A DNA stretch of 64,000 bases, taken from NCBI RefSeq assembly GCF_016432865.1, contig NC_067400.1:624650001-624714000 (forward strand), in the 5' to 3' direction. Origin of the DNA: Antechinus flavipes (lineage: Eukaryota). The stretch's first letter is position 1, and each line of letters begins with the position of its first letter. The notes beneath the pieces are model-generated. The model worked only from the letters and a program-made list of their open reading frames with translations. It was not told the DNA's origin and searched no databases. This document shows positions 6,583-62,422 of this stretch, piece after piece. The translations under genes were made by a program, and so were the position numbers.

Positions 6583-9500
6583 CTAGGCCCCCTTGTGTAT
6601 CCTCAGGGCTGCCCGCAGCCCTGACTTGATGGCTGTCTCCACCCAGCCGTGGGGGAGGGCCGTGTACTCCCCCGCAAAGTGCACGCGGCCCTCGGGCTGG
6701 GTCCAGTCCCAGTGCCAGGGCGTCCCCTGCGCGGCGTCTCTGGGCTGCGGGGGCTGCATCACGAAGCCACCCTGGCTGTAGCGATCCTCCCCCCAGCGCT
6801 TCACGGCCCCGCGGCCGTCCCAGAGCTCCCGCACCTTCTCGCCGTGGAGGCCCACGACGTCCTCCAGCGCCAGGCGCAGGATCTCCTCCTCCCCCAGGCC
6901 CGCAAAGGCGGCCGTGGCGTCCGACCACGTGTAGGATGCGAGGAGGAGGCCGCCGGCCTCTCCCCCGGGGCCCTGTGGGTAGTAGAGGGCGCGGACCGGG
7001 CGGTCAGTGTTCGAGTGCCCCCCCAGGATGCCCTCGTCCTCCCAGAAGGGTCTCCGGAAGCTGAGGAAGACCTTGGTAGCCGGGACGTAGTGGACGTTAC
7101 GCAGTGCCCGGCGAAGGGGGGGCCGCAAGGGCGGCTGGAAATCGACGTGGCTCAGGGCCGTGCTAGTGGTGGCCAGCAGCACGCGGTCAGCAGTCAGGGA
7201 CAGCAGGCGCGAGGGCTGCTGGGGGTCACGGTAGTGGACGGTGGCTCCTTTCCGGTTCTGGGTCACTCGGACCACGGGCGCCTGGAGCAGGACGGGGCCG
7301 CTCAGGGAGAGCAGCAGGGCACGGGGCAGCTGGTCCCAGCCGTCGCGGAGGCGCCAGTACCTGGGGGGCACACGCGGAGGCCGGTGGGCCCGGGGCTCGA
7401 GCGTCCCCCCCCCCAGTCCCCCTCCTTCCCGATTCGCACCTGAGCCCGTCGTTGAGGTAGCTGTGGGCCCGTAAGGCCTCGGCGAAGCTGAGGGAGAAGA
7501 AGCCGTCCTCGGCCATCACGTCTCCCAGGAGCTGGGCGGCCTCCGTGCTCAGGTTCCCTTCTCCCAGGAGGTAGTTCTGGGGGCAGAGTGGGGCCTCAGG
7601 CCTGCACGCCCCCTCGGCCCCCACGCTGTTTCCAGGGCCTCCCTTTGTAGGGCAGGGTCTGGGGGCTCGGCCATTGGGCCCCCGCCCTCAAGCCGGTCCA
7701 GCCCAGCCCAGGGAACTGGGGGGGGGTGGGGGAGGGATCCTCACGGTCAGGCTTTGACCTCAGGGCTGTCCAGTGGTCGGAGCGTCCCCTCGCTGACCTT
7801 TCTCTGCTAAGGGTACTTGGCTTTGTGGAGCTTGGGTGGGCTTCCACCATCTCCTTAAAATGCCCTCCCCCAGCTCCTTCTGGGCTTTCTGTGGCTGCCT
7901 TTGCCCCTCCTCCTCCTCCCCCTTGTCTCTGCAGTTCAGGTGGGGGTTGTGCCCCTCTGTCATAATCACTTTGGACAAGTGAGGGGCAGGGCTGGCCTGG
8001 CATTTCCCCCTCCCCCCCAGATCCTGGGGCTCGGAATCCTCCCCTCTGCCTCTGGGGTCCCCTTTCCCCGACCTTCTGTGTCCCCCCCAGGACGGAGGGA
8101 GATGCGGCCCCTCTCTCACCAGGAGGGTGATGTTCTCGAATTTCTTTAGCGCCCCTGCGCAGCCCAGGCGCTTGAGATCATCCAGGGCCTACGGGGAGCG
8201 ACAACCCGGGATGGGGCCCCAGCCGGCAGCCCCCGGGTCCCCCATCCCTCCCCATCCCTCCCCGACGGCCCGGAGCCGAAATCGGATCCAGGGGTCCCCA
8301 GGTCCTCCGAGGAGAGGGGTTCGCTCAAGGCCATCCAAGCGCCCAGCGCCCCTCCCCTGGGAGCCCCCAGTCCTGGCCTGCCCTTGGGGAGCTCGGGACC
8401 CTCTTTTGCCCAGCCCCCTGCCCCGAGCGCGCGGCTGCCCGGGCCTGTAGGGGCGGTGATCCGAGCTTCCGTCAGACGGGGGAGGGGCTGGCGCACCTTG
8501 TCCAGGGCCAGCTGGTAAATGGCCTCCGGGGAGCGGCCTCGCTCGGAGGCCCGCAGGCGGTAGCCCAGCTGCTCCGGCGCAGCCTCCACCACGAAGTTCC
8601 GCAGCTTTACCCCGTTGGCCTCCGTCCAGGCGTTCATGTCGTACTGAACGAAGGGGACCAGGGGGAGGCCCAGGAGGGCGCAGAGCTTCAGGAGGAGCCT
8701 GCGGGAGGGAGCACTGCGCCGTGAGGGGGGCGGGGTGTCCTGACAGCAGGGAGAAAGGGGCGCACGGACAGCGAGGGGTGAGGGGCGCTCAGACAGCTGG
8801 GGGGAGGGGCGCCCTCCAGCCCAGGGGGGTGTGAGGGGCGCTCAGACAGCCCGGTGGAGGGGGGAAGGGGGGGTGAGGGGCGCTCAGACAGCCCGGTGGA
8901 GGGGGGAAGGGGGGGTGAGGGGCGCTCAGACAGCCGGGGGGGGGAGGGGCGCCCGCCCAGCCCAAGGAGGTGTGAGGGGCCCCGCCCAGGCCCGAAGGCG
9001 GGTGGGAGCCCGAGCTGCCCCGTACGTGTGGCTGGATGGTATCCTCATGGCCCCCAGCTCTCCCAGCCAGCCCGTCCGCTCATCCCTGTACGTCAGGATC
9101 CGGCCCCCGATCCTGTCGCTGGCCTCCAGCAGAGTCACCTGGGAGAGGACGCTGTCAGTGCCACGCCCCCCAGCCCTGTCCGGGCCCTGATACTTGGGGG
9201 GGCAGTATTCGGGACCGTGGTCCAGCGGAAGGTGCACTCGGGGATTGGGCCCAGGGAGGAGTTGCCTCCGCCCCAGCCTTCCCTCCCAGCTGGGGGGTGG
9301 GGCGCGAGGTGACCAGACCCCAGGGAGCACCCCCTTCTGGGAGAGGGCAGCCGGACCCCGGGGAGCACCCCCTGTCAGAGACAGGGTGAATGGACACCCC
9401 CGGCTGGGAGGGGGGGCTGGTTTTGGGACAGATGTTGGCGGCCAGTTGGGGTCAGAGCGGGAATTTCCCACAGCTTCGGGGAATGCCTTGGGCCGGGCTC

Positions 9501-9934
9501 CAGACGTCTGCACGCTCCCCCTCCCCCCCGCAAGTGAAGGGGGAGTTTGGAGCCCAAAGGGCCTCGGGGTTTCCCTCGAGGGGCTCCATCCCTGGGCAGC
9601 CCAGGACGCCGGGAGCCCCACCTGGTGTCCGGCGTCCTCCAGCACCCTGGCGGCCACCAGCCCGGCCACGCCGGCCCCCACCACCGCCACCCGCTGGGGC
9701 CGCGCCGTCCGGTTGAGCCCCCGGCTGACGATGGCCAGCAGCTCCTCGCGGTCCGGGTCCTGGAAGCACCTCAGGAAGGGGTCGTCCCCGGGATCGGCCT
9801 CGCCGGCCCCGGCCCCGTGCAGGAGGAGGAGCAGACCTGGGCGGGGAGGAGCCAGGAGCCTCCTGAAGCCCCCCGCCCTGGCAGGGACAGCCCTGCCTCC
9901 CGGCCCCGCCCCCATACTTACCCCACCAGCGCAT
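6583..9934 (-). CDS. IL4I1: Interleukin-4-induced 1, secreted L-amino-acid oxidase, 508 aa
   Basis: Coding exons 9934-9922, 9836-9622, 9138-9026, 8698-8497, 8188-8120, 7576-7440, 7360-6583. 1527 nt in frame. MRWWGLLLLL signal-like start, [11 protein letters not shown] fold, [35 protein letters not shown]. Confidence 0.95.
8770..8945. repeat. About 43-bp intronic tandem repeat in IL4I1
   Basis: GAGGGGCGCTCAGACAGCCCGGTGGAGGGGGGAAGGGGGGGT, 2 full and 2 partial copies. Confidence 0.85.
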
Positions 9935-10109
9935 GACTCCGAGCGGGAAGGGACGACCTGGGGGCTGAGGAGAGAAGCCGCCGTGAGCCCAGCGGGGGCC
10001 GCCCCCAGCGCTGCCTGCGCCTCCACGTCCAGAGTTCATGTTAATCCTACTGGACACCTGCCCCAGTCCCAGTCTCCAAGTGCTTTCCTTGTCCATCCTT
10101 CTGGCCCCC

Positions 10110-10440
10110 TGCCCCTGCCCCCCGAAGCCCAGCCCCGGCCACTCTCCTGCCCCCCGAAGCCCAGTCCCGGCCACTCTCCGGCCCCCCGAAGCCCAGCCCC
10201 GGCCACTCTCCGGCCCCCCGAAGCGCAGCCCCGGCCACTCTCCGGCCCCCCGAAGCCCAGCCCCGGCCACTCTCCGGCCCCCCGAAGCCCAGCCCCGGCC
10301 ACTCTCCGGCCCCCCGAAGCGCAGCCCCGGCCACTCTCCGGCCCCCCGAAGCCCAGCCCCGGCCACTCTCCGGCCCCCCGAAGCCCAGCCCCGGCCACTC
10401 TCCGGCCCCCCGAAGCCCAGCCCCGGCCACTCTCCGGCCC
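10110..10440. repeat. 32-bp minisatellite, about 10 copies
   Basis: Unit GGCCACTCTCCGGCCCCCCGAAGCCCAGCCCC. Confidence 0.95.
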
Positions 10441-10520
10441 CCTGCCCATCTCCTTTCCCAGCTCTGCATCCCCGCCCCTGCCATGGCTTGGGGTCCCTCC
10501 CCCGGCCCCTGCTCTCGCAC

Positions 10521-10740
10521 CTGCCGCCACCAGCCTCCCTACTGCTGAGCCTCCTGTCCCCCTTTGCTTTTGTCCCCGCGGGGCGGGCGCTGGCCCCTCC
10601 CCAGCCCTGACGCTCTTTGGGAAGTCCGGTCCCCTGGGCAGGAAAGCGAAACTTCTCCCCCAGTTCGGGGACTGCCGGCCGGGGCGGGCCGCGGGGCTGA
10701 GGATGGGCGGGGGGCGGGGCGGGAGAGGAGGGGCTGCTCA
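10521..10740 (-). promoter_or_regulatory. Putative IL4I1 proximal promoter and non-coding exon 1
   Basis: Minus-strand donor CAG|GTGCG at 10521 and acceptor at 9957. ISRE GAAAGCGAAACT 10642-10653. Several GC boxes 10580-10725. Confidence 0.5.
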
Positions 10741-11099
10741 GCGGCCCCCGGTGGCTTCCCGGGGTCTGCAGACGCGGGGGCTGGGGCGCGTCCGGGGCTC
10801 CCCCGCCTCGCCTCCAGGGCCCCCGTCCGTCCCCGCTCCGTCCCCGCCTCCCCCATTTGTCCCGGACCGGAGGGAGCGCAGGAGCAGTTCTGGTTCCTAA
10901 CTTTTCTGGGGAGCTGGATTAGCGGGGGAGGGGGAGGGGGGCTGCCCGGGGATAACAGCAGCAGCCGCGGCCCCAGCTCCTGGCCCAGCGCTGGGCTGTC
11001 GGTCAGGGCGCAACACGGGGTCTGGGATCCCATCCCTCGCCTGGAAACCGGGCCGAGAGCAGCCCCTCGCGCTCGGAATCGGCTCCTGTCTGCCCGTGT

Positions 11100-11420
11100 C
11101 TCGTGTCCCCCCCTTTCTCCTGTCTGCCCCCCCTCTCCCTCCCCTTCCCTCCTTCCCTCTTTCCTTCTCTCCCCTCTCCTTCCCCGCTCTTCTATCCTCC
11201 CTCCCCTCTCCTCTATTCCTCTTCCTCCCTCCCTCCCTCCTCCCTATATTTTTATTCTCTTCATTGCTTCCTTTCTCCATCTCGTTCTCTCTGTCTCTCT
11301 GGGGTTCTCTCTGTCTCCCCGGGGTTCCCTCTGTCTCCCCGGGGTTCTCTGTCTCTCCGGGGTTCCCTCTGTCTCTCCCGGGTTCTCTGTCTCCATCTCT
11401 GCCCTTTCTCCGATCCCATC
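11100..11420. repeat. CT-rich low-complexity sequence with (TCTCTGTCTCCCCGGGG)n repeats
   Basis: Polypyrimidine tract followed by degenerate 17-mer repeats. Confidence 0.85.
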
Positions 11421-12000
11421 GTTGTCTCTCCATGGATTTCTCAGCGTCTTCACCCCTTACCCCCCCCCCCCATCCCTCGGTCGGCCTCCATCCCTTACAC
11501 CCTCCGGGTTCTTGATTTGTCCATTCCCCTCCCCTCCCCCCAGTTCCCTCGGGCCTCCTCCACACCTTTCCCAGTCCGCCTTCACTGATGAGCAATAACT
11601 CACTTAACACTTCCTGGCTGTGTGACCCTGGGCAAGTCACTTAACCCCAATTGCCTCCAGGGGAAAAAAGGAAAGGGGAAAAGAGCTTCTGCCCAGGGCG
11701 GATGGGATAATGATGCGAAGGAGAGAAGGCCACCAGGCTCAACTCGGGGCCTCCGTTCCTTGGTCTTCGGGAAAATACCATGGGGATGAGGGGCAGGGAG
11801 CGGAGAGTCGGGACGGCGAGGGGAGGGACTGTCTTGCTGACGTCGGTGACTTTAAGTCGCTGGGATCAAATCCTCTCCGACTCTGAGTCCTGAAAGAACT
11901 GACCGACCCTGTCAGTGATCTCTGAAGCTTGGAAAACGGAGGTTGTAGCACGGTTCCAGGGAAGGGCAAACACCTCCTATCTTTATTTATTGCTGAGGCA

Positions 12001-12127
12001 GGGGGGGTTAAGTGACTTGTCCAGGGTCACACAGCCAGGAAGTGTGTCGTGTCCGAGGCTGGATTTGAACTCGGGTCCTTCTGACTTCAGGGCTGGCGCT
12101 CTACCCGCTGGGCTACCTCGCTGCCCC
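12001..12127 (-). mobile_element. WSINE1-type tRNA-derived CORE SINE
   Basis: Reverse complement reads GGGGCAGCGAGGTAG...GAGTTCAAATCC...GTGTGACCCTGGACAAGTCACTTAACCCC. A partial + copy lies at about 11595-11660. Confidence 0.8.
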
Positions 12128-12199
12128 TACCTTGAGCTTTTAAAAGAGGAAGGGGAACGGAGGCTGCAAGCCATGGTCTGATGGGCTTGACGTTGCTTA

Positions 12200-13100
12200 G
12201 TGGAAAAGGGAGGGAGGATCCCTCCGACGCAGGCGCAGAAAGAACGGCCGGGGCCGGTCGGGGCTCAGGTTCTCTCCTGACCAGAACGTGTGACGACCAT
12301 GGCGTGGGCAGGTGGGGGAGGAGGGCCGGAGGAGGACGTGGCCGAGCCGAGGGCGGGAGCGAGCAGGCAGAGCCACGGGCTTGACGTGCTCGTGGCCGCG
12401 GTTCGCCCAGAACTGCGTATTTCTCTTTGGGCGAAGCATTTGGAGCCTTCCTTGTGGCCGAGAGGTGGGTTTGGAACAGGGAGCGACCTCGGCTAACGGC
12501 GAATGGCGGGGGCCGGCCTGGAGCGCCCCGGAGAGCGGCATTGTGGGTACGGGAGGCACCTCCGGTGGGCACGTGACCCGCAGCCGGACCGGATCCCCAG
12601 AGCTGGCTCTGAAGCCCCGGGCCGGCCTCCCGAGGGTCTGCCGGGGACGGAGGCCGCCGTGGAGGCACAAGACGGGGCGGAGCCCCGGGCTCGGAGGGGG
12701 CCGCATCCCAGCGGTCAGCGTGACCCGGCCCGAGGAGCTTCCCGAATCTCAGCTCTCCGGCCGCCTCGGCCCGGGGGCTCCCACCGCTCTCCGCCCTCGC
12801 CGCTGACCTCTGGCGGGTGAGAGCGCTCTCTGGGCTCCGGGTCTGGCAACCGAGGCAGGGGGAGTTCCCGGGGTCGGTCAGAATGCCGAAGGGCCTCGAA
12901 ATTCAGCCACGAGGGGAGGGACGAGGGGAGCCAGAGGCTCCGGCCGAAGCTTCTCCCTCCCGGGCCCAGACGGGCGCCCATCTCCGCCGCCCCTGCCAGA
13001 GGGAGGCCCTCCCAGCCCCTCGGGAGTCAGGCAAGGGCAGCCAGGGCCAGGACCTCGGCAGGACCTCGGGACCGTTGCTCAGCCTGGGAAGGAGATGAAG
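12200..13100. promoter_or_regulatory. Orphan CpG island
   Basis: High CpG density, CACGTGAC at about 12570, several TGACG half-sites. No recognisable coding exon. Confidence 0.5.
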
Positions 13101-30200: not shown

Positions 30201-32875
30201 GGCTTCTCGTGGCCAGCCCATCTCAGGCCCGGCTGGACACCAGCCCCGGAGAACCCTGGGACACGGAAGCCAGACCCTCTAGAAAGGGAGCTTAGAGCCC
30301 TGGAGAAAGGGAAAGGACAGGGGGCACCGGCATGAGCCCTGGGAGGGTTCTAATACATGAAGGCCTTGCCCGGCCTCAGAAAACATCCAGGCGGCAACTT
30401 AGAAGCAGCAGAGCAGCTGGGGGGTGCGGGAATCTCCCCGATGGGCCAAGCTGGTGAGAGGATGAAGGGAAGCCGGCTGAGTGACCAGGAGGACCAGGGT
30501 CCGGTAGATACTTCCCAGGAAGGGGCAGGCAGGGAGGAGGAGGGGCAGGGAGCCCAGAGTTCCAAGCACAAGCTATCATTCCCCTCCTCTCTTTCAGCTT
30601 TCAACAAACTTTGTTTTGTGAATTATGTTGGGAGAGAAAAATCAGAACAAAAGGGAAAAACCGTGGGAGAGAGAAAAACCAGAAAATGTTGTCACTCCCC
30701 TTCTCAAGAGTCCTCAGTGGCTCCCTGCTGCTTCTCGGCATTTAAAGCCCTTCACCACCTGTCCGGCTCCCTTTGCGTTACTCCCTTAACTCAGTGCTCC
30801 CAAACTGGATGATGATAGTGGCCATCCCCCATGCCTTTGCCCGGCTCGTGCCTCTTGAGGGGGGATGCCCTCCCTTTTGATGGACGCCTCTGCAGGGCTT
30901 ATTCAGGGGCTGCCTCCTCCGGAGCCATTAACGCCTCGGGGCTGGGCCCGCCCAGTAAAGGCAGATCTAGGCTGGCGCAGGGGCCTCGGGGGAGGTAGCT
31001 TTAACCCGAAGGCCGCCTGACCTTGGGAGAGATGCAGTTAAAAGCGGCCGGTTGTTCCCCTAGCTTCCGGGGAGCTCAGGGACTCTCTCCTAAGTCCCCC
31101 CCCCCCTCCGGGAGGGCACCAGATCTGGCTGGTGGGGTCAGCGCCCGCAAAGTCCCTGAGGCGGCCCCGAGCCTCCCTGCGCAGGCCCCCCCCCCCCCCC
31201 CCCCCCGCTGAGCCCCCAAGTGAGCCTGTCAGGGACCGGGAGCGCGGGCCACAAACGCATCCTCCTGCGGCGGGGTCTCTGGGCTGTCACAGCTCGGAAC
31301 CGGGGCCACTGAGTTTGCGATTCTTCCGCCGGCCCGGATGCCGGCCTGGGGGCCCTAACGTCGTCAGGGGGGGAGGGGGGATGGAGGGGAGGCGCACACC
31401 TCAACATCTTGCCCTGCTCCGGAGCAGGCAGACGGGGCCTCCGCGGAAGGCTGACTTTGGGGGGCGGGCCCTCCCCGGGAGCGAGCAAAGCGTTTGGGGG
31501 GGGCAGGGTCGAGGCTGGGAAGTGCGGGCGCTTCTGCCTCAAATCAACAAAAGCTTTGAGGCAGCCTCTGGGGGCCAGCGGGAGGGGTGGAGCTGGAGCT
31601 GGGGAGACGGTCGCTATGGAGACGCGATGCTTGGAGATCAGTTACCCTGGTACCGAGTGCGCTTGCACCTGCTGGGGCCTGCGGGGGTGGGGGGTGGGGG
31701 GTGGGGGGTGTGGGGGTGGGAGAAGGGTCCTGGCTGACCCCCGGCCTAGAAGACCCTCCCTCCCGCCCTTTCCAGCCGTTTCACAGAGAGCCTTTGTGCC
31801 CATCACCCTCTCCTCCCTTCTAGCGCCTCCCCCTGAGATTACCCCCCACCTTCTAATGGTTTGCCTGCGCCTCCCCCATCAGACGGGGAGCTCCTTGGGG
31901 GGCAGGGCTCTCAGCACCGGGCCTGCTGGAACACTTGCTGAATCACTGATGCTCTGGGACCCCGGGTGGGGTTTGCAGGTCCCCTCTCCAGCTCATTACA
32001 GACGAGGAAACTGAGGCAAAAAGGGCGAAGTGAATTATTCAGGTTCACATAACAAGAGCCTAAGGGCAGATTTGAATCCAGACTTCCTGGTCCACTGCCT
32101 TCTAACGACCCCAATTATCACTGACTTGGGAATGCACGTCCTTTAAAACGCCATTCTCAGGGTCTGCGGCCGGAGGGACCTCGGTCCTTCCGGGGACCAG
32201 CCTGGGCATGGGGGCTCCAGGGAGGGCGCCTGGCCAGAAGCTGGCGTTGTCTCCATGTCCTTTGTGACCCAGAAGGCCTCAAGCCCCAGCCTCCCCAGGG
32301 GCAGGCCCGCTCAGAGACCTGCTTCCCCCCCTGCCCTGTATCCACGGTAGTGGCCCCAGGCTTGCCACCTGATCTGGGCCCCTGGGGCCGCTGGGGGAGC
32401 TGTAGGGGGGCCCAGAGGGGGGAAGCAGACAGCCACACTGATGCCGTTCCAGGCTGAGAGCCTTGGTTCCTTTTGCCCAGGCTCCTCCGTGAAAGGGGAA
32501 ATCGCCTGACGGAGGCCTTCCCCGGGTCTGGGCAGGAGGGGGGGGGCACGTGTGGGCACTGCCAAGTGTCGCCTCAGCAGCCCCTCCACCCCCGCCATTA
32601 CAGCTGCAAAGTGTGTTCCCGGCTCCCCACCTCCCCCGTGCTAAGTGTGAGCTCTGAGGAGCCACATAGAGACAGTCCCTGTACTCAGGGAGCTCAACTA
32701 ACTGGGAAGACAGCCACCAAGGGAGGGGGGAGGCCCCTTCCCCCAAATGGGGGTTCTGGAAAAACTTGCCAGTGGGAGGAAGGGTACACAGGAGGCATCT
32801 CAGGCATGGAAACTGAGAGCGCCCTTCTGGAGAGCAGGGGCCTTGTAAGTGCTTGATAATGTTACCTATGAAATC

Positions 32876-57500: not shown

Positions 57501-57949
57501 GTCAAAGAACAAACACTTATTAAACTCCTACTATGTGCCAAGCACTATGCTAAATTCTGGAGAATCGAAGAGGCCCTCGAGAAAGTCGCAGCCTAACAGC
57601 GGAGACTCCGGGCGAACGAGCAATGTACAGGATAACTAGGAGAAAGTCAACAAACGGAAGGCACTGGGATTAGGAGGGGTGGGAAGGCTCCGCCTCCGCA
57701 AAATCCGTGACCAACCCTCACCTCCTCAAGGCCGCGGTCCTAGACCGCATTTGGGGTTTTCCTGGCCAAGATAGTGTAGTGGTTTGTCACTTCCTTCTCC
57801 AGTTCCTTTTACAGATGGGGAAACTGAGGGAAGCAGTCTGAAATGACTTGCTCAGGGTCACACGGCTAGTAAGGGAGGAGTCTGCATTACCGCACTCCAG
57901 ACCTGGCAGCTCAATTCATTCGTCACCTCGCTACCTCAGGCCCTGCCTA

Positions 57950-58620
57950 GAGGCATCTTCAGGCTCAGGGCCGGGGAAACACTGTCAACCTCAGGCTCCG
58001 CCCCAGGAACCACGGGCCCCACCCTCAGGAGGCCAACAACCAGGTCCAGTTCCGCCCCTGGGTCCTTAGGCTCCGCCCAGACGTCAGCATCTTTCCTCGT
58101 CGCTATGGCAACCATTCGCGCTTTCCTACAGCTCCGCCCCCTGACATCAGTCTCTCCAGGCAGTCGGCCTCCTCTCCAACGCTCCAGAACGGAGGGGAAG
58201 CTGAAGTACTTCAGTGAGGACTACCATTCCCAAGATGCCACGCGCTCCATCACTCGGACGGCGGCCGCTGACCAGTCCTGGGAAGGAGATCCGCGCGTGC
58301 GCTGGGGGGGGGGTCGTCGCCCCTCCGCTGGAATTTCTTCGAGAGCATGTGCGGAAGGGGCGGGACGCTGAGGGCGCTAGGCATTGTGGGCTTGTCTCCC
58401 AGGCCGCTGGTCGGGGGGCTAGCTCGGCGCAGAGGAGGGGGCACGGGTGGAGGCGGAGGCCGCTCCTGTCTCCATGGTAACACGCCAGGCCGGGTGGGGA
58501 TGGGTGGCCATGACGATGGGAGAGGGAGGTAGAACGGCCCAGATCGCCATGGTGACGGAGGGGGTAATGAACGGGAGCGCGGTGGGTCTCTATGGTAACG
58601 AAAGGGAGTGGGGGTTGGGG
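57950..58620 (+). promoter_or_regulatory. CpG promoter of the ZSWIM9-like paralog with an RFX X-box cluster
   Basis: Three GCTCCGCCC GC boxes. X-boxes GTCGCTATGGCAAC 58099-58112, GTCTCCATGGTAAC 58468-58481, GTCTCTATGGTAAC 58586-58599, near-match ATCGCCATGGTGAC 58543-58556. Confidence 0.65.
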
Positions 58621-59862
58621 GTGGGGGGAGAGTAGTTCCAGACTATGGCCATGATCCAGGACCCATTACCTTTCTCCACACTCCCCAGCTGCTTAGACCT
58701 GACCTCATCCTGTTTCCAGCTCCCAACGAAGTCGTCCCCATCCTCATCTTCATCCCCTCCCCCTCCCCCGGCTCCTGCCCCCGTCCCCATTCTTCCCCTC
58801 CCTCTCCCACAGTCCTGAGCTCTCTCCCTCTCCAGTTCCTCCCTGGACCCTAACTCTCATTGCCCTCAGTCCTGCCCCTCCCCAAGATGTCCTCTGGTCC
58901 TCACTCCCACCCCATCTTCACCTCTTCCTCCACTTCCCGCCTCCTCCCTCCTCCTCAGCCTGTCCTGGGCCCCCTCCGGGTGCTGCATAGCTAGGTGCTG
59001 GGCTCTCACCCCCATCCTGTTTTCCACTGCCTTTCTCCCTCTCACCCCGGCCCGCGTTGTCCGGCATGGCCATTCCCAGCGCTCTTCCCCTCTCTCCCCC
59101 TCCCCTGGAACCTGCCCCGCCCCCCTCCCCCCCCAGCCCAACCTGGTCCTTCCCCAGGGAGTGTTTGTGGCTGACGGCCCCCGGCAGGAAGTGCCCTCTG
59201 CTGGGGGAGGGAGGAGAGGGAGCGAGGGGCTCAGTTTGTCCCTGTGGGACGCATTAAGGGAGAGAGGGGTGTTCCCCCAGGAGGGGATCAGTGAGGAGGG
59301 GCTGACGGGCAGCGTCCAAGGCTGCTGAGAGCACAAGGAGGAGGAGGAGTGGGAGGGTTTGGCCGCTAAGGTCATGGTCTCTCTGGAGAGCAGATGGGGG
59401 AGGGGGGACTGCGAGGCCAGGGGTCAGTTTGTAGGAGGAGAGGAAGCTGAGGCCTCCGGTGTAGACACGGCTTCTCAGGAGCTCAGACCCAAAGGGCAGA
59501 AGAGAAATGGGAGGTTTGTGGGGGACGGGGCAGGCAGAGAGAGCGGAGAGAAGTGGGGGCCAGGACCCCCAGGCTGGGTGAGGAGGGAGCTCAGGGCCAG
59601 TGACTGAGGGAACCAGAGCACAGGGACTGTCCCCATTTTTCAGATGAGGAGCCCGAGGCTTGACGAAGCTCAGTGACTTGAGGTCTCAGTAAGTGTCAGG
59701 AGGGGCTGGGGGCCTCGGGGCCGTCCTTCCTGCCCCGCCTCTCTGGGCACCTCCCCGTTGCAGGGCCTGCCCCCCTCCCCCGGGCCTCACGGTGCGCCGG
59801 CTCTCCCTCCGCAGCCCGAGGAAGGAGCCCCCCGCTGCCCGGGCCCCGCCGGCGGCGCCACC

Positions 59863-62422
59863 ATGGGCGAGCTGGGCCTGGGCCTGGAGTTCCACACGTG
59901 GCGCCACTTCAGCAGCTTCTTCGACGACTGGTGTGAGCGGCACAAGGTGCTGTTCATCATCGCCAGCCTCAAGCCCCTGATCTCCCTGCGCCAGCCCCCG
60001 CTGCCCTACCTGCCCAGCCTGGCCTCCACCCTGCGCTTCCGCTTCGTGCGCCTCATCTGCAAGCACAGCGGCACCTACGTGGGGCAGAGCGTAGTGCAGC
60101 GGGACCAGCAGTGAGTGCTCCCCACGGAGCCGGGCGGGGGGCGGGGGGCGGGGCTCGGGAAGCAGCAGGGCCCCGGGAGGGGACGGGGAGCTCGGCCGGC
60201 CAGCCCGGCACAGCCAGCAGAAGCCTTGGGTGCGGTTCCCTGTGGGTGGGAGGAGAGCCGGAGGGCGCCGGCCTGGGGCTCGGGGCAGGGTCGGTTGTGG
60301 GCCTGGCAGCGGCCGCGCGGAGAGGTGGCACCCGAAGGGCGGGAGGCTCATGGGCAGGGCTCTGCTGTCCGTGGTGCTCCCTGGCCCTGCTCCTCGCCCA
60401 CCCCTTACTTACCTTGCTCCCTGCTGCTCTCCGGGGTGCTGCCTGCCCCCCTCCCGGGGTCCCTCTCCCCTTTCTCACGGTGCTCCCTGCTGTCTGCCCC
60501 TCCCCCCTCCCCTTTCTCACCGTGCTCCCTGCTGTCTGACCCTCCCCCCTCCCCTTTCTCACCGTGCTCCCTGCTGTCTGACCCTCCCCCCTCCCCTTTC
60601 TCACCGTGCTCCCTGCTGTCTGACCCTCCCCTCTCCCCTTTCTCACCGTGCTCCCTGCTGTCTGTCTCTCCCCCCTCCCCTTCCTCATGGTGCTCCCTGC
60701 TGTCTGCCCCTGCCCTTCCCCATGGTTTCTCCCCTCCTTCTCACCGTGCTCCCTACTGTCTGACCCTCCCCCCTCCCCTTTCTCATGGTGCTCCCTGCTG
60801 TCTGCCCCTGCCCTTCCCCATGGTTTCTCCCCTCCTTCTCACCGTGCTCCTTACTGTCTGACCCTCCCCCCTCCCCTTTCTCACCGTGCTCCCTGCTGTC
60901 TGTCTCTCCCCCCTCCCCTTTCTTACCTCGCTCCCTGCTGCTCTCCGGGGTGCTGCCTGCCCCCCTCCCGGGGTCCCCCTCCCCTTTCTCATGGTGCTCC
61001 CTGCTGTCTGCCCCTCCCCTCCCGCACGGTCTCACCCCCCCTCCCTGCTGCTGTCTCCCCGCCAGGAGCCAGAAGATCGACTGCCCGGCCCTCATCACGC
61101 TGCGCCTGGGCCCCAAGAAGGACCGGCTGGTGGTGACGGAGGCCAAGCTGCAGCACAACCACCAGCTCTCCCCGCGCGAGTTCTCGCGCTGCTTCAAGCG
61201 CAGCCAGCTGGAGGCCAGCCTGGGGCTGCCCATCCGCATCACCAACAGCGTCTCCAAGCGCTTCCTGGCCCCCGACCTGGTCTGGAACCTGGAGGACTAC
61301 AGCCGGGCCAAGGACAAGGGCATGTGCCAGCTGCTCGGGGAGATGCACGCCCTCTTCCGGGCTGACCCCGGGGCCAAGGTCAAGCTGGTCTTCCAGGAGG
61401 ACGTGGCCATCCTCAACTCCATCTTCCTGGCCACGTCGCACATGCGGCAGCTGGCGTGCTCCTTCCCCCGCCTGCTCTTCTTGGACCAGGCGGCCGGCCT
61501 GCCCGGGGACTTCGAGCTGTACTCTGTGCTCTGCCAGGACGCCAACGGGCGGGGCCGCGAGGTGGCCTACTGCCTGGCGCGCAGGGGCACGCCCGACCTG
61601 CTGGTCTTCATCGTGGCCTCGCTGGTGCAGAGCGTCCCCGAGATCAAGACGCTGGTGGAGTGCCTGACCGTGGGCGTGGCCTGCCTGGCGGGCGTGGACG
61701 CCGTGGAGGAGGTGCTGCCCTGCGCCCGCGTGCAGGTGTGCCGCGCTCAGGTGCTGGAGGCCCTGGGGCGCCGGGCGCGGGAGCTGGCGGTGCCCGGGGA
61801 GCGGCGCATCGCCAACCTCCTGCACAACCTGGCCCACGCCGCCTCCCCCAAGGTCTACAGCCAGTACCTCAGCGACCTGGAAGACGTGGCCCCCCTGGAG
61901 TTCCTCCGCTACTTCCTGGAGACCTGGCACCCGTACAAAGGCACCTGGGCCGCCTGCTGGGCCTACTACCGGGGGGAGAGCTGCCCCTTCGTGGACCACC
62001 TCGAGGCTCACCGGCAGAAGCTGCTGCCCGCCCTGGCCCGAGACGCCTCCCTGGCGGGCTCCGTCCGGGGCTTGCTGGACCTCCAGAGCCTGCCCGTGGA
62101 ACTTCAGGGGTTGCAGGCCGAAGAGGTGGCCGAGCGCTACCAGGCAGCGGGGCCCGGGGAGGCGGCCGCCCTGGCCGCCGAGGAGCTGGCCCTGGCCCGC
62201 CACGGCGGGGGCATCCGGCCGGCCGAGGGGGGCGGCTTCGTGCTGGAGGGGACTGTGCGGGGGGCCTCCTTCACCGTGGGCGCCGACCTGGCCTCCTGCA
62301 GCTGCTCCATCTTCACAGCTGGCCGCCGGCCCTGCCGCCACATCTTCGCTGCCCGCCTCTGGGCGGGGAAGGCCCTCTTTGACGTCAGCCTTCTGCCCCC
62401 CGCGGGTGGCGACGATGGGTAA
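59863..62422 (+). CDS. ZSWIM9-like paralog, domesticated Mutator (MULE) transposase-type SWIM protein, 534 aa
   Basis: Kozak GCCACCATGG at 59863, 5' acceptor at 59815. Exons 59863-60110 and 61066-62422, 1605 nt in frame. FHTWRHFSSFFDDWCERH, VRLICKHSG...CPALI...DRLVVTEAKLQHNH, DPGAKVKLVFQED, SWIM CSCSIFTAGRRPCRH. Collinear with ZSWIM9. Confidence 0.9.
60400..61050. repeat. 42-bp minisatellite in the intron of the ZSWIM9-like gene
   Basis: Unit TCACCGTGCTCCCTGCTGTCTGACCCTCCCCCCTCCCCTTTC, about 14 degenerate copies. Confidence 0.95.

What the first reader, a model, noticed from the sequence alone, without database searches (positions are those of the whole stretch)
58099..58599. Three or four RFX X-boxes in the paralog promoter suggest a cilia or sperm programme
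Seen: GTCGCTATGGCAAC, GTCTCCATGGTAAC, GTCTCTATGGTAAC and ATCGCCATGGTGAC within 500 bp around the likely start site. Established: 14-bp X-boxes near a start site mark RFX2/RFX3 targets in ciliated cells and spermatids. By contrast, the shared ZSWIM9/LIG1 promoter carries E2F/CRE/NRF1/ZNF143 motifs and I saw no X-box there. Inference: the duplicate diverged into testis or motile-cilia expression, linking a transposase-derived protein to the RFX network.
Basis: partly seen in the sequence, partly recalled or inferred. Interest (0 to 1): 0.72.

Follow-up and report, generated by a model that had tools for sequence, protein, structure and literature searches.

The report
Conserved RFX-site cluster at ZSWIM9-like promoter
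The start of a marsupial transposase-derived gene (ZSWIM9-like) carries three to four binding-site motifs for RFX transcription factors; two or three of them have been kept in place since marsupials and sloths split, so RFX control is likely, but whether it means sperm or cilia expression is still untested.

Summary
All four 14-mers are at the stated coordinates. Three fit the strict X-box consensus GTHNYYATRRNAAC and are its only matches in 64 kb (0.10 expected; 0 of 20,000 local shuffles gave three). They are not copies of a longer repeat.

The window is Antechinus flavipes. The gene is RefSeq 'ZSWIM9-like'. The cluster lies at its 5' end: the ATG inside X-box 2 (58474-58476) is the last three bases of exon 1 in the gene models of four species. 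RNA contigs begin at X-box 4.

The motifs recur at orthologous positions in Tasmanian devil, Dromiciops and, more weakly, a two-toed sloth, within an alignable promoter. I found none upstream of the emu or anole orthologue.

So a conserved RFX-site cluster near the start site is well supported. The cilia or sperm inference is not tested, because the tissue of the two RNA runs is hidden and no expression table was readable. The same promoter also carries conserved ZNF143, NRF1-like, E-box and GC-box motifs. It is therefore a housekeeping-type CpG promoter with X-boxes added, not a clean switch away from the ZSWIM9/LIG1 type. RFX1, RFX2 and RFX3 share one motif, so the sequence cannot name the factor.

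This is a new candidate member of a known kind, of moderate interest. An earlier scan note (s1-196607) had already described the gene itself.

The parts
58099..58112 (+). X-box 1, GTCGCTATGGCAAC. It lies about 0.3 kb upstream of the inferred CpG-island start site.
   Evidence: Strict consensus match. Identical in devil (L001:9631). GTCGCTATGGAAAC in Dromiciops (L002:9330). In sloth the orthologous site is GTTACGATGGTGAC (L004:9568), with the better half-site on the other side. Spacing to the ZNF143 site is kept: 121 bp in Antechinus and 124 bp in sloth.
58220..58244 (+). ZNF143 SBS-like element, ACTACCATTCCCAAGATGCCACGCG
   Evidence: Found by pattern scan. Aligned and conserved in devil, Dromiciops (ACTACACCTCCCAGGATGC) and sloth (ACTACAACTCCCAGCAGGC). 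Assignment to ZNF143 rests on my knowledge of the SBS consensus.
58293..58302 (.). NRF1-like palindrome, GCGCGTGCGC
   Evidence: Present in Antechinus and devil; GCGCCTGCGC in sloth.
58343..58364 (.). Conserved block GAGCATGTGCGG (E-box CATGTG at 58346-58351) followed by the GC box GGGGCGGG
   Evidence: The E-box block has 9 of 12 columns invariant across the four species.
58381..58390 (-). Second, reverse-oriented SBS-like core, GCATTGTGGG
   Evidence: Conserved in all four mammals. The same core lies in the emu 5' CpG island (L003, about 9079-9092).
58468..58481 (+). X-box 2, GTCTCCATGGTAAC. Its ATG (58474-58476) is the last codon of exon 1 and the annotated start codon. GT at 58477-58478 is the exon-1 splice donor.
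   Evidence: Identical in devil and Dromiciops (both at locus position 9995); GTTCCCATGGTAAT in sloth (L004:9995). 11 of 14 columns are invariant, which places it in the top 2% of 14-nt windows. In L001, L002 and L004 the called coding range begins at motif position 7, the A of the ATG. The proteins P0036, P0039 and P0052 begin with M and then continue with the sequence encoded right after the downstream acceptor.
58543..58556 (+). X-box 3, ATCGCCATGGTGAC. Weak in Antechinus.
   Evidence: Two mismatches to the palindromic pattern. Identical in devil. Full X-box GTCGCCATGGTAAC in Dromiciops (L002:10070). Perfect left half GTTGCC in sloth.
58586..58599 (+). X-box 4, GTCTCTATGGTAAC. RNA contigs start here.
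   Evidence: Strict match. Identical in devil (L001:10113). Degenerate in Dromiciops and sloth. RNA-run contigs begin at 58586 (X22) and 58624 (X21), and there are none upstream.
58586..59124 (+). Stretch covered by contigs of the two RNA runs. It is either a long 5' leader from a downstream start site or retained intron 1.
   Evidence: table 8. Contig depth is similar to or above that of the coding exons. The strand is assumed from the gene, not shown.
59815..60110 (+). Exon 2 of ZSWIM9-like, with the canonical Kozak ATG at 59863
   Evidence: tblastn of A. flavipes XP_051845811 (P0036) gave 100% identity. The acceptor cag|CCCGAG is read. The spliced joint 60110>61066 (GT..AG) appears in both RNA runs.
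61066..62422 (+). Last exon of ZSWIM9-like (DUF5575 RNaseH-like, DUF5575_C and SWIM domains)
   Evidence: Pfam scan, tblastn at 99.8% identity, RNA joint.

Best explanation
This is a conserved cluster of RFX-family binding sites (X-boxes) at the 5' end of the ZSWIM9-like gene of Antechinus flavipes. The gene has a TATA-less, GC-rich promoter with ZNF143, NRF1-like, E-box and GC-box elements at about 58.2-58.4 kb. One X-box lies about 0.3 kb upstream of this core. Three more lie just downstream, across the exon 1/intron 1 boundary (58468-58599). Each site has one perfect RGYAAC half-site and one weaker half, all in the same orientation. This is the usual form of natural sites bound by RFX dimers. 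RFX proteins most likely bind here and tune or redirect transcription, possibly by driving a second start site right behind the cluster, where the RNA contigs begin. Shown: the motifs, their statistical excess, their position at the gene's 5' end, and their conservation. Inferred: RFX occupancy, the exact start sites, which RFX paralogue acts, and the tissue.
For: Motif excess: 3 strict matches against 0.10 expected per 64 kb, and 0 of 20,000 local shuffles with three or more. The sites are not copies of a longer repeat. Position: exon 1 ends at the ATG inside X-box 2 in models from four species. RNA contigs start at 58586 and 58624 and carry the 60110>61066 splice. All sites fall within the -500 to +500 'robust' window for functional X-boxes (PMC5838959). 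Conservation: the strict sites are at orthologous places in devil and Dromiciops. Sloth has one-mismatch sites at X-boxes 1 and 2 and a perfect half-site at X-box 3, inside a collinear promoter alignment. In sloth X-box 1 the stronger half-site is on the opposite side, which fits selection on a palindromic site rather than on the exact letters. X-box 3 is better in Dromiciops than in Antechinus. A second genome from the same study (run X20) differs from the window at 58534 and 58621-58628 but not inside X-boxes 2-4. Outside these promoters, about 165 kb of window and loci held only two other strict matches.
Against: There is no binding data. X-box 2 overlaps an annotated start codon and a used splice donor, so part of its conservation could be RNA-level. 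X-box 4 is conserved only within dasyurids. No X-box was found upstream of the emu or anole orthologues, though their start sites are unknown. Start-site positions are inferred from CDS-based models and from contigs, which cannot show true 5' ends. I used consensus patterns, not the JASPAR matrices.
Confidence: 0.72

Rival explanations
1. One reading: the X-boxes make ZSWIM9-like a direct RFX2/RFX3 target expressed mainly in spermatids or multiciliated cells.
For: Several high-quality X-boxes lie close to the start site, which is the hallmark of RFX2 testis targets (PMC4498915) and of ependymal cilia genes (PMC7498320). In two RNA runs the contigs begin at X-box 4. That would put X-boxes 2 and 3 at about -118 and -43 of a downstream start site.
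Against: The tissue of the RNA runs is unknown. The promoter is a CpG-type promoter with conserved ZNF143, NRF1-like, GC-box and E-box sites, plus YY1 in two species, which is typical of broad expression. There is no conserved FOX motif, no full CRE and no TATA box. RFX1-3 share one motif, and RFX targets include many non-ciliary genes. The only published zswim9 pattern, in Xenopus, is faint and ubiquitous, and its orthology is unclear (PMC10236294).
Confidence: 0.3
2. The repeated motif is kept mainly for RNA-level reasons: each ATG|GTAAC is a start codon plus a 5' splice site for alternative first exons, and its likeness to an X-box is incidental.
For: X-box 2 is used as an exon-1 donor and annotated start codon in four species. 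X-boxes 3 and 4 also read ATG|GT. Any of these donors joined to the acceptor at 59815 would give the same protein. Dromiciops lacks the canonical ATG, so an upstream ATG is needed there.
Against: Splice-donor rules do not explain the conserved left halves (GTCTCC, GTCGCT, GTTCCC, GTTGCC), nor the unusual C (T in sloth) at intron position +5 where donors usually have G. X-box 1 reads ATG|GC in marsupials. Sloth X-box 3 keeps GTTGCC but has no GT after its ATG. No joint from 58476, 58551 or 58594 was seen in the RNA runs.
Confidence: 0.12
3. The cluster is a chance or compositional effect of a GC-rich region, or was carried in by a transposable element.
For: The window is very GC-rich, and a MIR SINE lies just upstream at about 57780-57900.
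Against: The shuffle tests. The flanks are unique. The sites are orthologous in four species spanning the marsupial/placental split.
Confidence: 0.02

Closest known systems
Promoter-proximal X-boxes of RFX1/2/3 target genes (ciliary genes, RFX2 spermiogenesis targets)
   Same: A 14-bp imperfect inverted repeat with a two-base spacer, one strong RGYAAC half-site, a position within a few hundred bases of the start site, and conservation across species.
   Different: There are three to four sites in 500 bp instead of the usual one; PMC7498320 reports 2-3 closely spaced sites only at a minority of promoters. They sit inside a ZNF143/NRF1-type CpG promoter, mostly just downstream of the inferred main start site. 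No binding or tissue data exist. The gene is a domesticated transposase with no known ciliary role.
MHC class II S-X-X2-Y module (RFX5 complex, CREB, NF-Y)
   Same: It contains an X-box, and a CRE half-site (CGTCA) lies 7-17 bp from X-box 1 in Antechinus, devil and sloth.
   Different: There is no Y box (CCAAT) at the required spacing. The X2 spacing is not conserved. The X-boxes are full palindromic RFX1-3-type sites rather than the degenerate MHC-II X1 box.
ZSWIM9/LIG1 bidirectional promoter in the same window (about 47.9-48.5 kb)
   Same: Both are CpG-rich and TATA-less, with ZNF143 SBS, NRF1-type and GC-box motifs.
   Different: The ZSWIM9/LIG1 promoter has E2F and full CRE sites and no X-box within one mismatch. 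The ZSWIM9-like promoter has the X-box cluster and lacks E2F and full CRE sites.

Membership tests
RFX X-box (RFX1-3 type binding site) | A 14-bp imperfect inverted repeat fitting GTNRCC(N0-3)RGYAAC or GTHNYYATRRNAAC | tested here: met
   Three strict matches (58099, 58468, 58586) and one weaker match (58543). Each has a perfect RGYAAC right half.
RFX X-box (RFX1-3 type binding site) | Occurrence above background composition | tested here: met
   0.10 expected per 64 kb against 3 observed. 0 of 20,000 local dinucleotide shuffles gave three or more.
RFX X-box (RFX1-3 type binding site) | Location within about -500 to +500 of a transcription start site (PMC5838959) | tested here: met
   Exon 1 ends inside X-box 2 in the models of four species. 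RNA contigs start at 58586. The exact start site is inferred, not measured.
RFX X-box (RFX1-3 type binding site) | Conservation of the motif at the orthologous position | tested here: met
   Devil: all four sites. Dromiciops: three. Sloth: two one-mismatch sites and one half-site. Emu and anole: none found.
RFX X-box (RFX1-3 type binding site) | Occupancy by an RFX protein (ChIP, EMSA) | not testable with these tools
   No binding data for marsupials are available here.
Ciliogenic / spermiogenic RFX2-RFX3 regulon | Expression enriched in testis or multiciliated tissues, and dependent on RFX | tested here: inconclusive
   Two RNA runs express the gene (spliced joint), but their tissue is coded. 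No supplementary expression table was readable. No paper mentions ZSWIM9-like.
Ciliogenic / spermiogenic RFX2-RFX3 regulon | Partner motifs often seen with X-boxes in motile-cilia or spermatid promoters (FOXJ1 site, full CRE). These are supportive, not strictly defining. | tested here: not met
   No conserved FOX core and no full TGACGTCA in the four promoters. ZNF143, NRF1-like, GC-box and E-box motifs are conserved instead.
MHC class II SXY module | An X1 box with an adjacent X2 (CRE-like) box and a Y box (CCAAT) at fixed spacing | tested here: not met
   No CCAAT near X-box 1 in Antechinus or devil, and the CRE half-site spacing varies.

The most novel reading that the evidence does not exclude
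ZSWIM9-like, a domesticated Mutator-type transposase gene lost from most placentals, is a direct RFX2/RFX3 target. It is switched on in spermatids or multiciliated cells from an alternative start site immediately behind the X-box cluster. X-box 2 would then work as one 14-bp element with three roles kept for about 160 million years (divergence time from my own knowledge): RFX site in DNA, and start codon plus exon-1 splice donor in RNA.
Probability: 0.25. Interest if true: 0.6.

Novelty: new member of a known kind. Interest (0 to 1): 0.4.

Why it matters
ZSWIM9-like has no known function and no literature. It is absent from human and mouse, so standard expression atlases say nothing about it. 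A conserved RFX-site cluster is the first concrete regulatory lead for the gene. It gives a cheap, testable prediction: RFX binding, and possibly testis or cilia expression from a second start site. The overlap of an RFX site with a used start codon and splice donor is also a tidy case of one short element under DNA-level and RNA-level constraint at once. If expression proves broad, this is just one more RFX-bound CpG promoter.

Tried and rejected
- **Longer repeat or tandem array.** Rejected: only the 14-mer is shared between the copies, and TRF finds nothing there.
- **Chance in GC-rich DNA.** Rejected by window-wide and local shuffles.
- **TE origin.** Rejected: the promoter is unique and collinear between marsupials and sloth.
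- **MHC-II-type SXY module and FOXJ1 or full-CRE partners.** Not found.
- **Tissue of expression.** The run search gave coded ids only. The A. flavipes genome paper lists 106 RNA-seq samples from 12 tissues, but no supplement is held as text. Searches for ZSWIM9, C19orf68 and ZSWIM9-like gave nothing on RFX, testis or cilia.
- **More species.** Look-ups for opossum and koala found no record. Brushtail possum, wombat, Gracilinanus, armadillo and sugar glider returned no DNA. The deepest marsupial split (didelphids) and the monotremes are therefore untested.
- **LIG1 PCNA-box peptide.** I looked for it to place the LIG1 start and found none. The ZSWIM9/LIG1 promoter was placed by CpG content and motifs instead.
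- **Steps not taken.** I did not use JASPAR matrices, which are not available here. I did not build a joined spliced CDS; exons were handled by reference only. Runs of N were left untouched.

Full report
**Observation.**
- Against the strict X-box consensus GTHNYYATRRNAAC, the window has exactly three matches: 58099, 58468 and 58586. Dinucleotide shuffles of the window give a mean of 0.10, and none of 100 reached three.
- 20,000 dinucleotide shuffles of 58000-58700 alone give a mean of 0.0007, and none reached three. GC content therefore does not explain the cluster.
- The site at 58543 is only half-site quality in this species.
- The copies share the 14-mer alone, not their flanks, and no tandem repeat covers them. 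They are independent motif occurrences.
- Each site has a perfect RGYAAC right half and a weaker left half, all in the same orientation.

**The gene.** The ORF at 60785-62422 carries DUF5575 (RNaseH-like), DUF5575_C and SWIM domains.
- A word-based protein search finds RefSeq 'ZSWIM9-like' proteins in marsupials, xenarthrans, platypus, ratites, squamates and amphibians. This agrees with earlier scan note s1-196607.
- The Antechinus flavipes protein XP_051845811 (P0036) matches the window at 100% (59815-60111) and 99.8% (61064-62419). The window is therefore A. flavipes or something very close to it.
- ZSWIM9 proper lies upstream, with coding exons at about 49.3-54.5 kb on the + strand.

**Where transcription starts.** P0036 begins 'M' and then 'PEEGAP...'. 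The second part is encoded immediately after the acceptor cag|CCCGAG at 59815, so the first codon comes from an upstream exon that ends in ATG.
- In devil, Dromiciops and sloth, the called coding range starts exactly at base 7 of the orthologue of X-box 2 (locus position 10001, motif at 9995).
- The devil X2 (P0039) and sloth X1 (P0052) proteins have the same one-codon first exon.
- Exon 1 therefore ends at the ATG inside X-box 2 (58474-58476), and GTAAC is its splice donor.
- The conserved, Kozak-perfect ATG of 'MGELGLG' is at 59863.
- Only two of the four laid runs are RNA: they carry the 60110>61066 GT..AG joint. Their contigs begin at 58586 (X22) and 58624 (X21) and run to 59124. They resume at 59369-59403 and continue unspliced into exon 2. 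Neither has a contig upstream of 58586, although a DNA run assembles 58304-58755.
- Contigs cannot prove a 5' end. The simplest reading is two start regions. One lies in the CpG core upstream of 58468 and gives the exon-1 isoform. The other lies near 58.56-58.62 kb, directly behind X-boxes 2 and 3 and at X-box 4.
- Either way, all four X-boxes fall inside the -500 to +500 window in which functional human X-boxes concentrate (PMC5838959).

**Conservation.** I fetched orthologous loci for devil (L001), Dromiciops (L002), emu (L003), two-toed sloth (L004) and anole (L005).
- Devil has all four sites unchanged.
- Dromiciops has GTCGCTATGGAAAC, GTCTCCATGGTAAC and GTCGCCATGGTAAC. The last is a full X-box where Antechinus has only the weak 58543 site.
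- Sloth has GTTACGATGGTGAC at X-box 1, GTTCCCATGGTAAT at X-box 2 and GTTGCCATGATGCG at X-box 3.
- The four promoters align collinearly, in this order: X-box 1; a ZNF143 SBS (58220-58244); an NRF1-like GCGCGTGCGC (58293); the block GAGCATGTGCGG with an E-box (58343); a GC box; a reverse SBS core GCATTGTGGG (58381); a YY1 site GCCGCCATC in Dromiciops and sloth only; then X-boxes 2, 3 and 4.
- Overall Antechinus-sloth identity is 42%. X-box 2 has 11 of 14 invariant columns (top 2% of windows), X-box 1 has 9 of 14 and X-box 3 has 8 of 14. X-box 4 is conserved only in dasyurids.
- In sloth X-box 1 the better half-site has moved to the other arm. This fits selection for a palindromic protein-binding site.
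- A second genome from the same study (run X20) differs from the window at 58534 and 58621-58628 but not inside X-boxes 2-4.
- Emu and anole show no X-box within one mismatch in the few kilobases upstream of their coding exons. Their start sites are not known, so this is weak negative evidence. The cluster is at least therian.

**Competing constraint.** X-box 2 doubles as an annotated start codon and a used splice donor. X-boxes 3 and 4 also read ATG|GT.
- Part of the conservation could therefore be RNA-level.
- Dromiciops has lost the canonical ATG (GCT GGC GAG CTG where the dasyurids have ATG GGC GAG CTG). An upstream ATG must therefore be used there.
- Splice and start-codon rules do not explain the conserved left halves, the shared +5 C, X-box 1 (ATG|GC in marsupials), or the sloth X-box 3, which keeps GTTGCC without a GT donor.
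- I read the donor and ATG as riding on an X-box of the GGTAAC type, not the reverse.

**Interpretation.** RFX binding is the best explanation (about 0.7). The step from there to a cilia or sperm programme is not established (about 0.3).
- RFX1, RFX2 and RFX3 bind indistinguishable motifs (PMC7498320). RFX functions extend well beyond cilia and testis (PMC5838959).
- The promoter is TATA-less and GC-rich, with conserved ZNF143, NRF1-like, GC-box and E-box elements. It lacks conserved FOX and full CRE motifs. It looks like a broadly active promoter with X-boxes added.
It overstates the difference, because the paralog promoter shares the ZNF143/NRF1/GC-box backbone.

**Limits.**
- The tissue of the RNA runs is hidden, and one read-laying run was all that was allowed.
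- Seven of twelve locus look-ups returned no DNA or no record, so didelphids and monotremes are untested.
- I used consensus patterns rather than JASPAR matrices.
- TF assignments for the SBS, NRF1, YY1 and E-box motifs rest on my knowledge of their consensus sequences.
- I built no joined spliced sequence.

**Verdict.** This is a new candidate member of a known kind (an RFX-target promoter), of moderate interest.

Noticed in passing
L002:12940-13000 (Dromiciops), compared with window 59860-59880: Dromiciops ZSWIM9-like lacks the canonical start codon of 'MGELGLG' (GCT GGC GAG CTG where the dasyurids have ATG GGC GAG CTG). Translation must start at an upstream ATG, either the X-box 2 ATG or the ATG of an extra exon at L002:12381.
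   Followed up: partly
window 58624-59108: In RNA run X21 the contig over this 5' stretch has a higher word depth (41) than the coding-exon contig (23.5). This could indicate a separate or prematurely ended transcript, or an antisense RNA. Contigs show neither strand nor level reliably.
   Followed up: no
window 60461-60715: A 42-bp C-rich unit repeated about six times at 93% identity (nested in a 126-bp period over 60460-60800), inside intron 2 of ZSWIM9-like and running into the start of the long ORF frame.
   Followed up: no
window 31610-31654: Two X-box-like sequences 31 bp apart (GTCGCTATGGAGAC and GTTACCCTGGTACC) in a GC-rich stretch far from either ZSWIM9 promoter. The first resembles X-box 1 of the paralog. 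The context is unknown; it probably lies inside LIG1.
   Followed up: no
L004:18545 and L004:23850 (sloth): A perfect X-box, GTCTCCATGGCAAC, lies between the end of ZSWIM9-like and the next gene. A fully palindromic GTTTTCATGAAAAC lies inside that next gene's range.
   Followed up: no
L005 (Anolis), genes at 10001-12835 and 17129 onward: In the anole, ZSWIM9-like lies directly upstream of LIG1 in the same orientation. In Antechinus, ZSWIM9 proper lies between the CpG promoter at about 48 kb and ZSWIM9-like. The local gene order around LIG1 differs between squamates and mammals.
   Followed up: no
L003:9300-9950 and L003:15332-15504 (emu): The 650 bp before the emu coding exon is a degenerate short-unit repeat (GGTCTGGCTTGGTC-like). 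Downstream of the gene there are five 43-bp tandem units, each with an SBS-like GCCACACCTCCCAGCATGC.
   Followed up: no
window 57780-57900; L002 about 9560-9640: A MIR SINE lies just upstream of the promoter in Antechinus. A separate MIR-like insertion of about 270 bp splits X-box 1 from the ZNF143 site in Dromiciops without disturbing either motif.
   Followed up: partly
window 59500-59525, compared with L001:11004-11021: Devil isoform X1 starts in a small extra exon (ATGGGACGCCGGTGGGAG|gt). Antechinus has an 11-bp shorter version (ATGGGAG|gt), so this alternative 5' exon differs between the two dasyurids.
   Followed up: no
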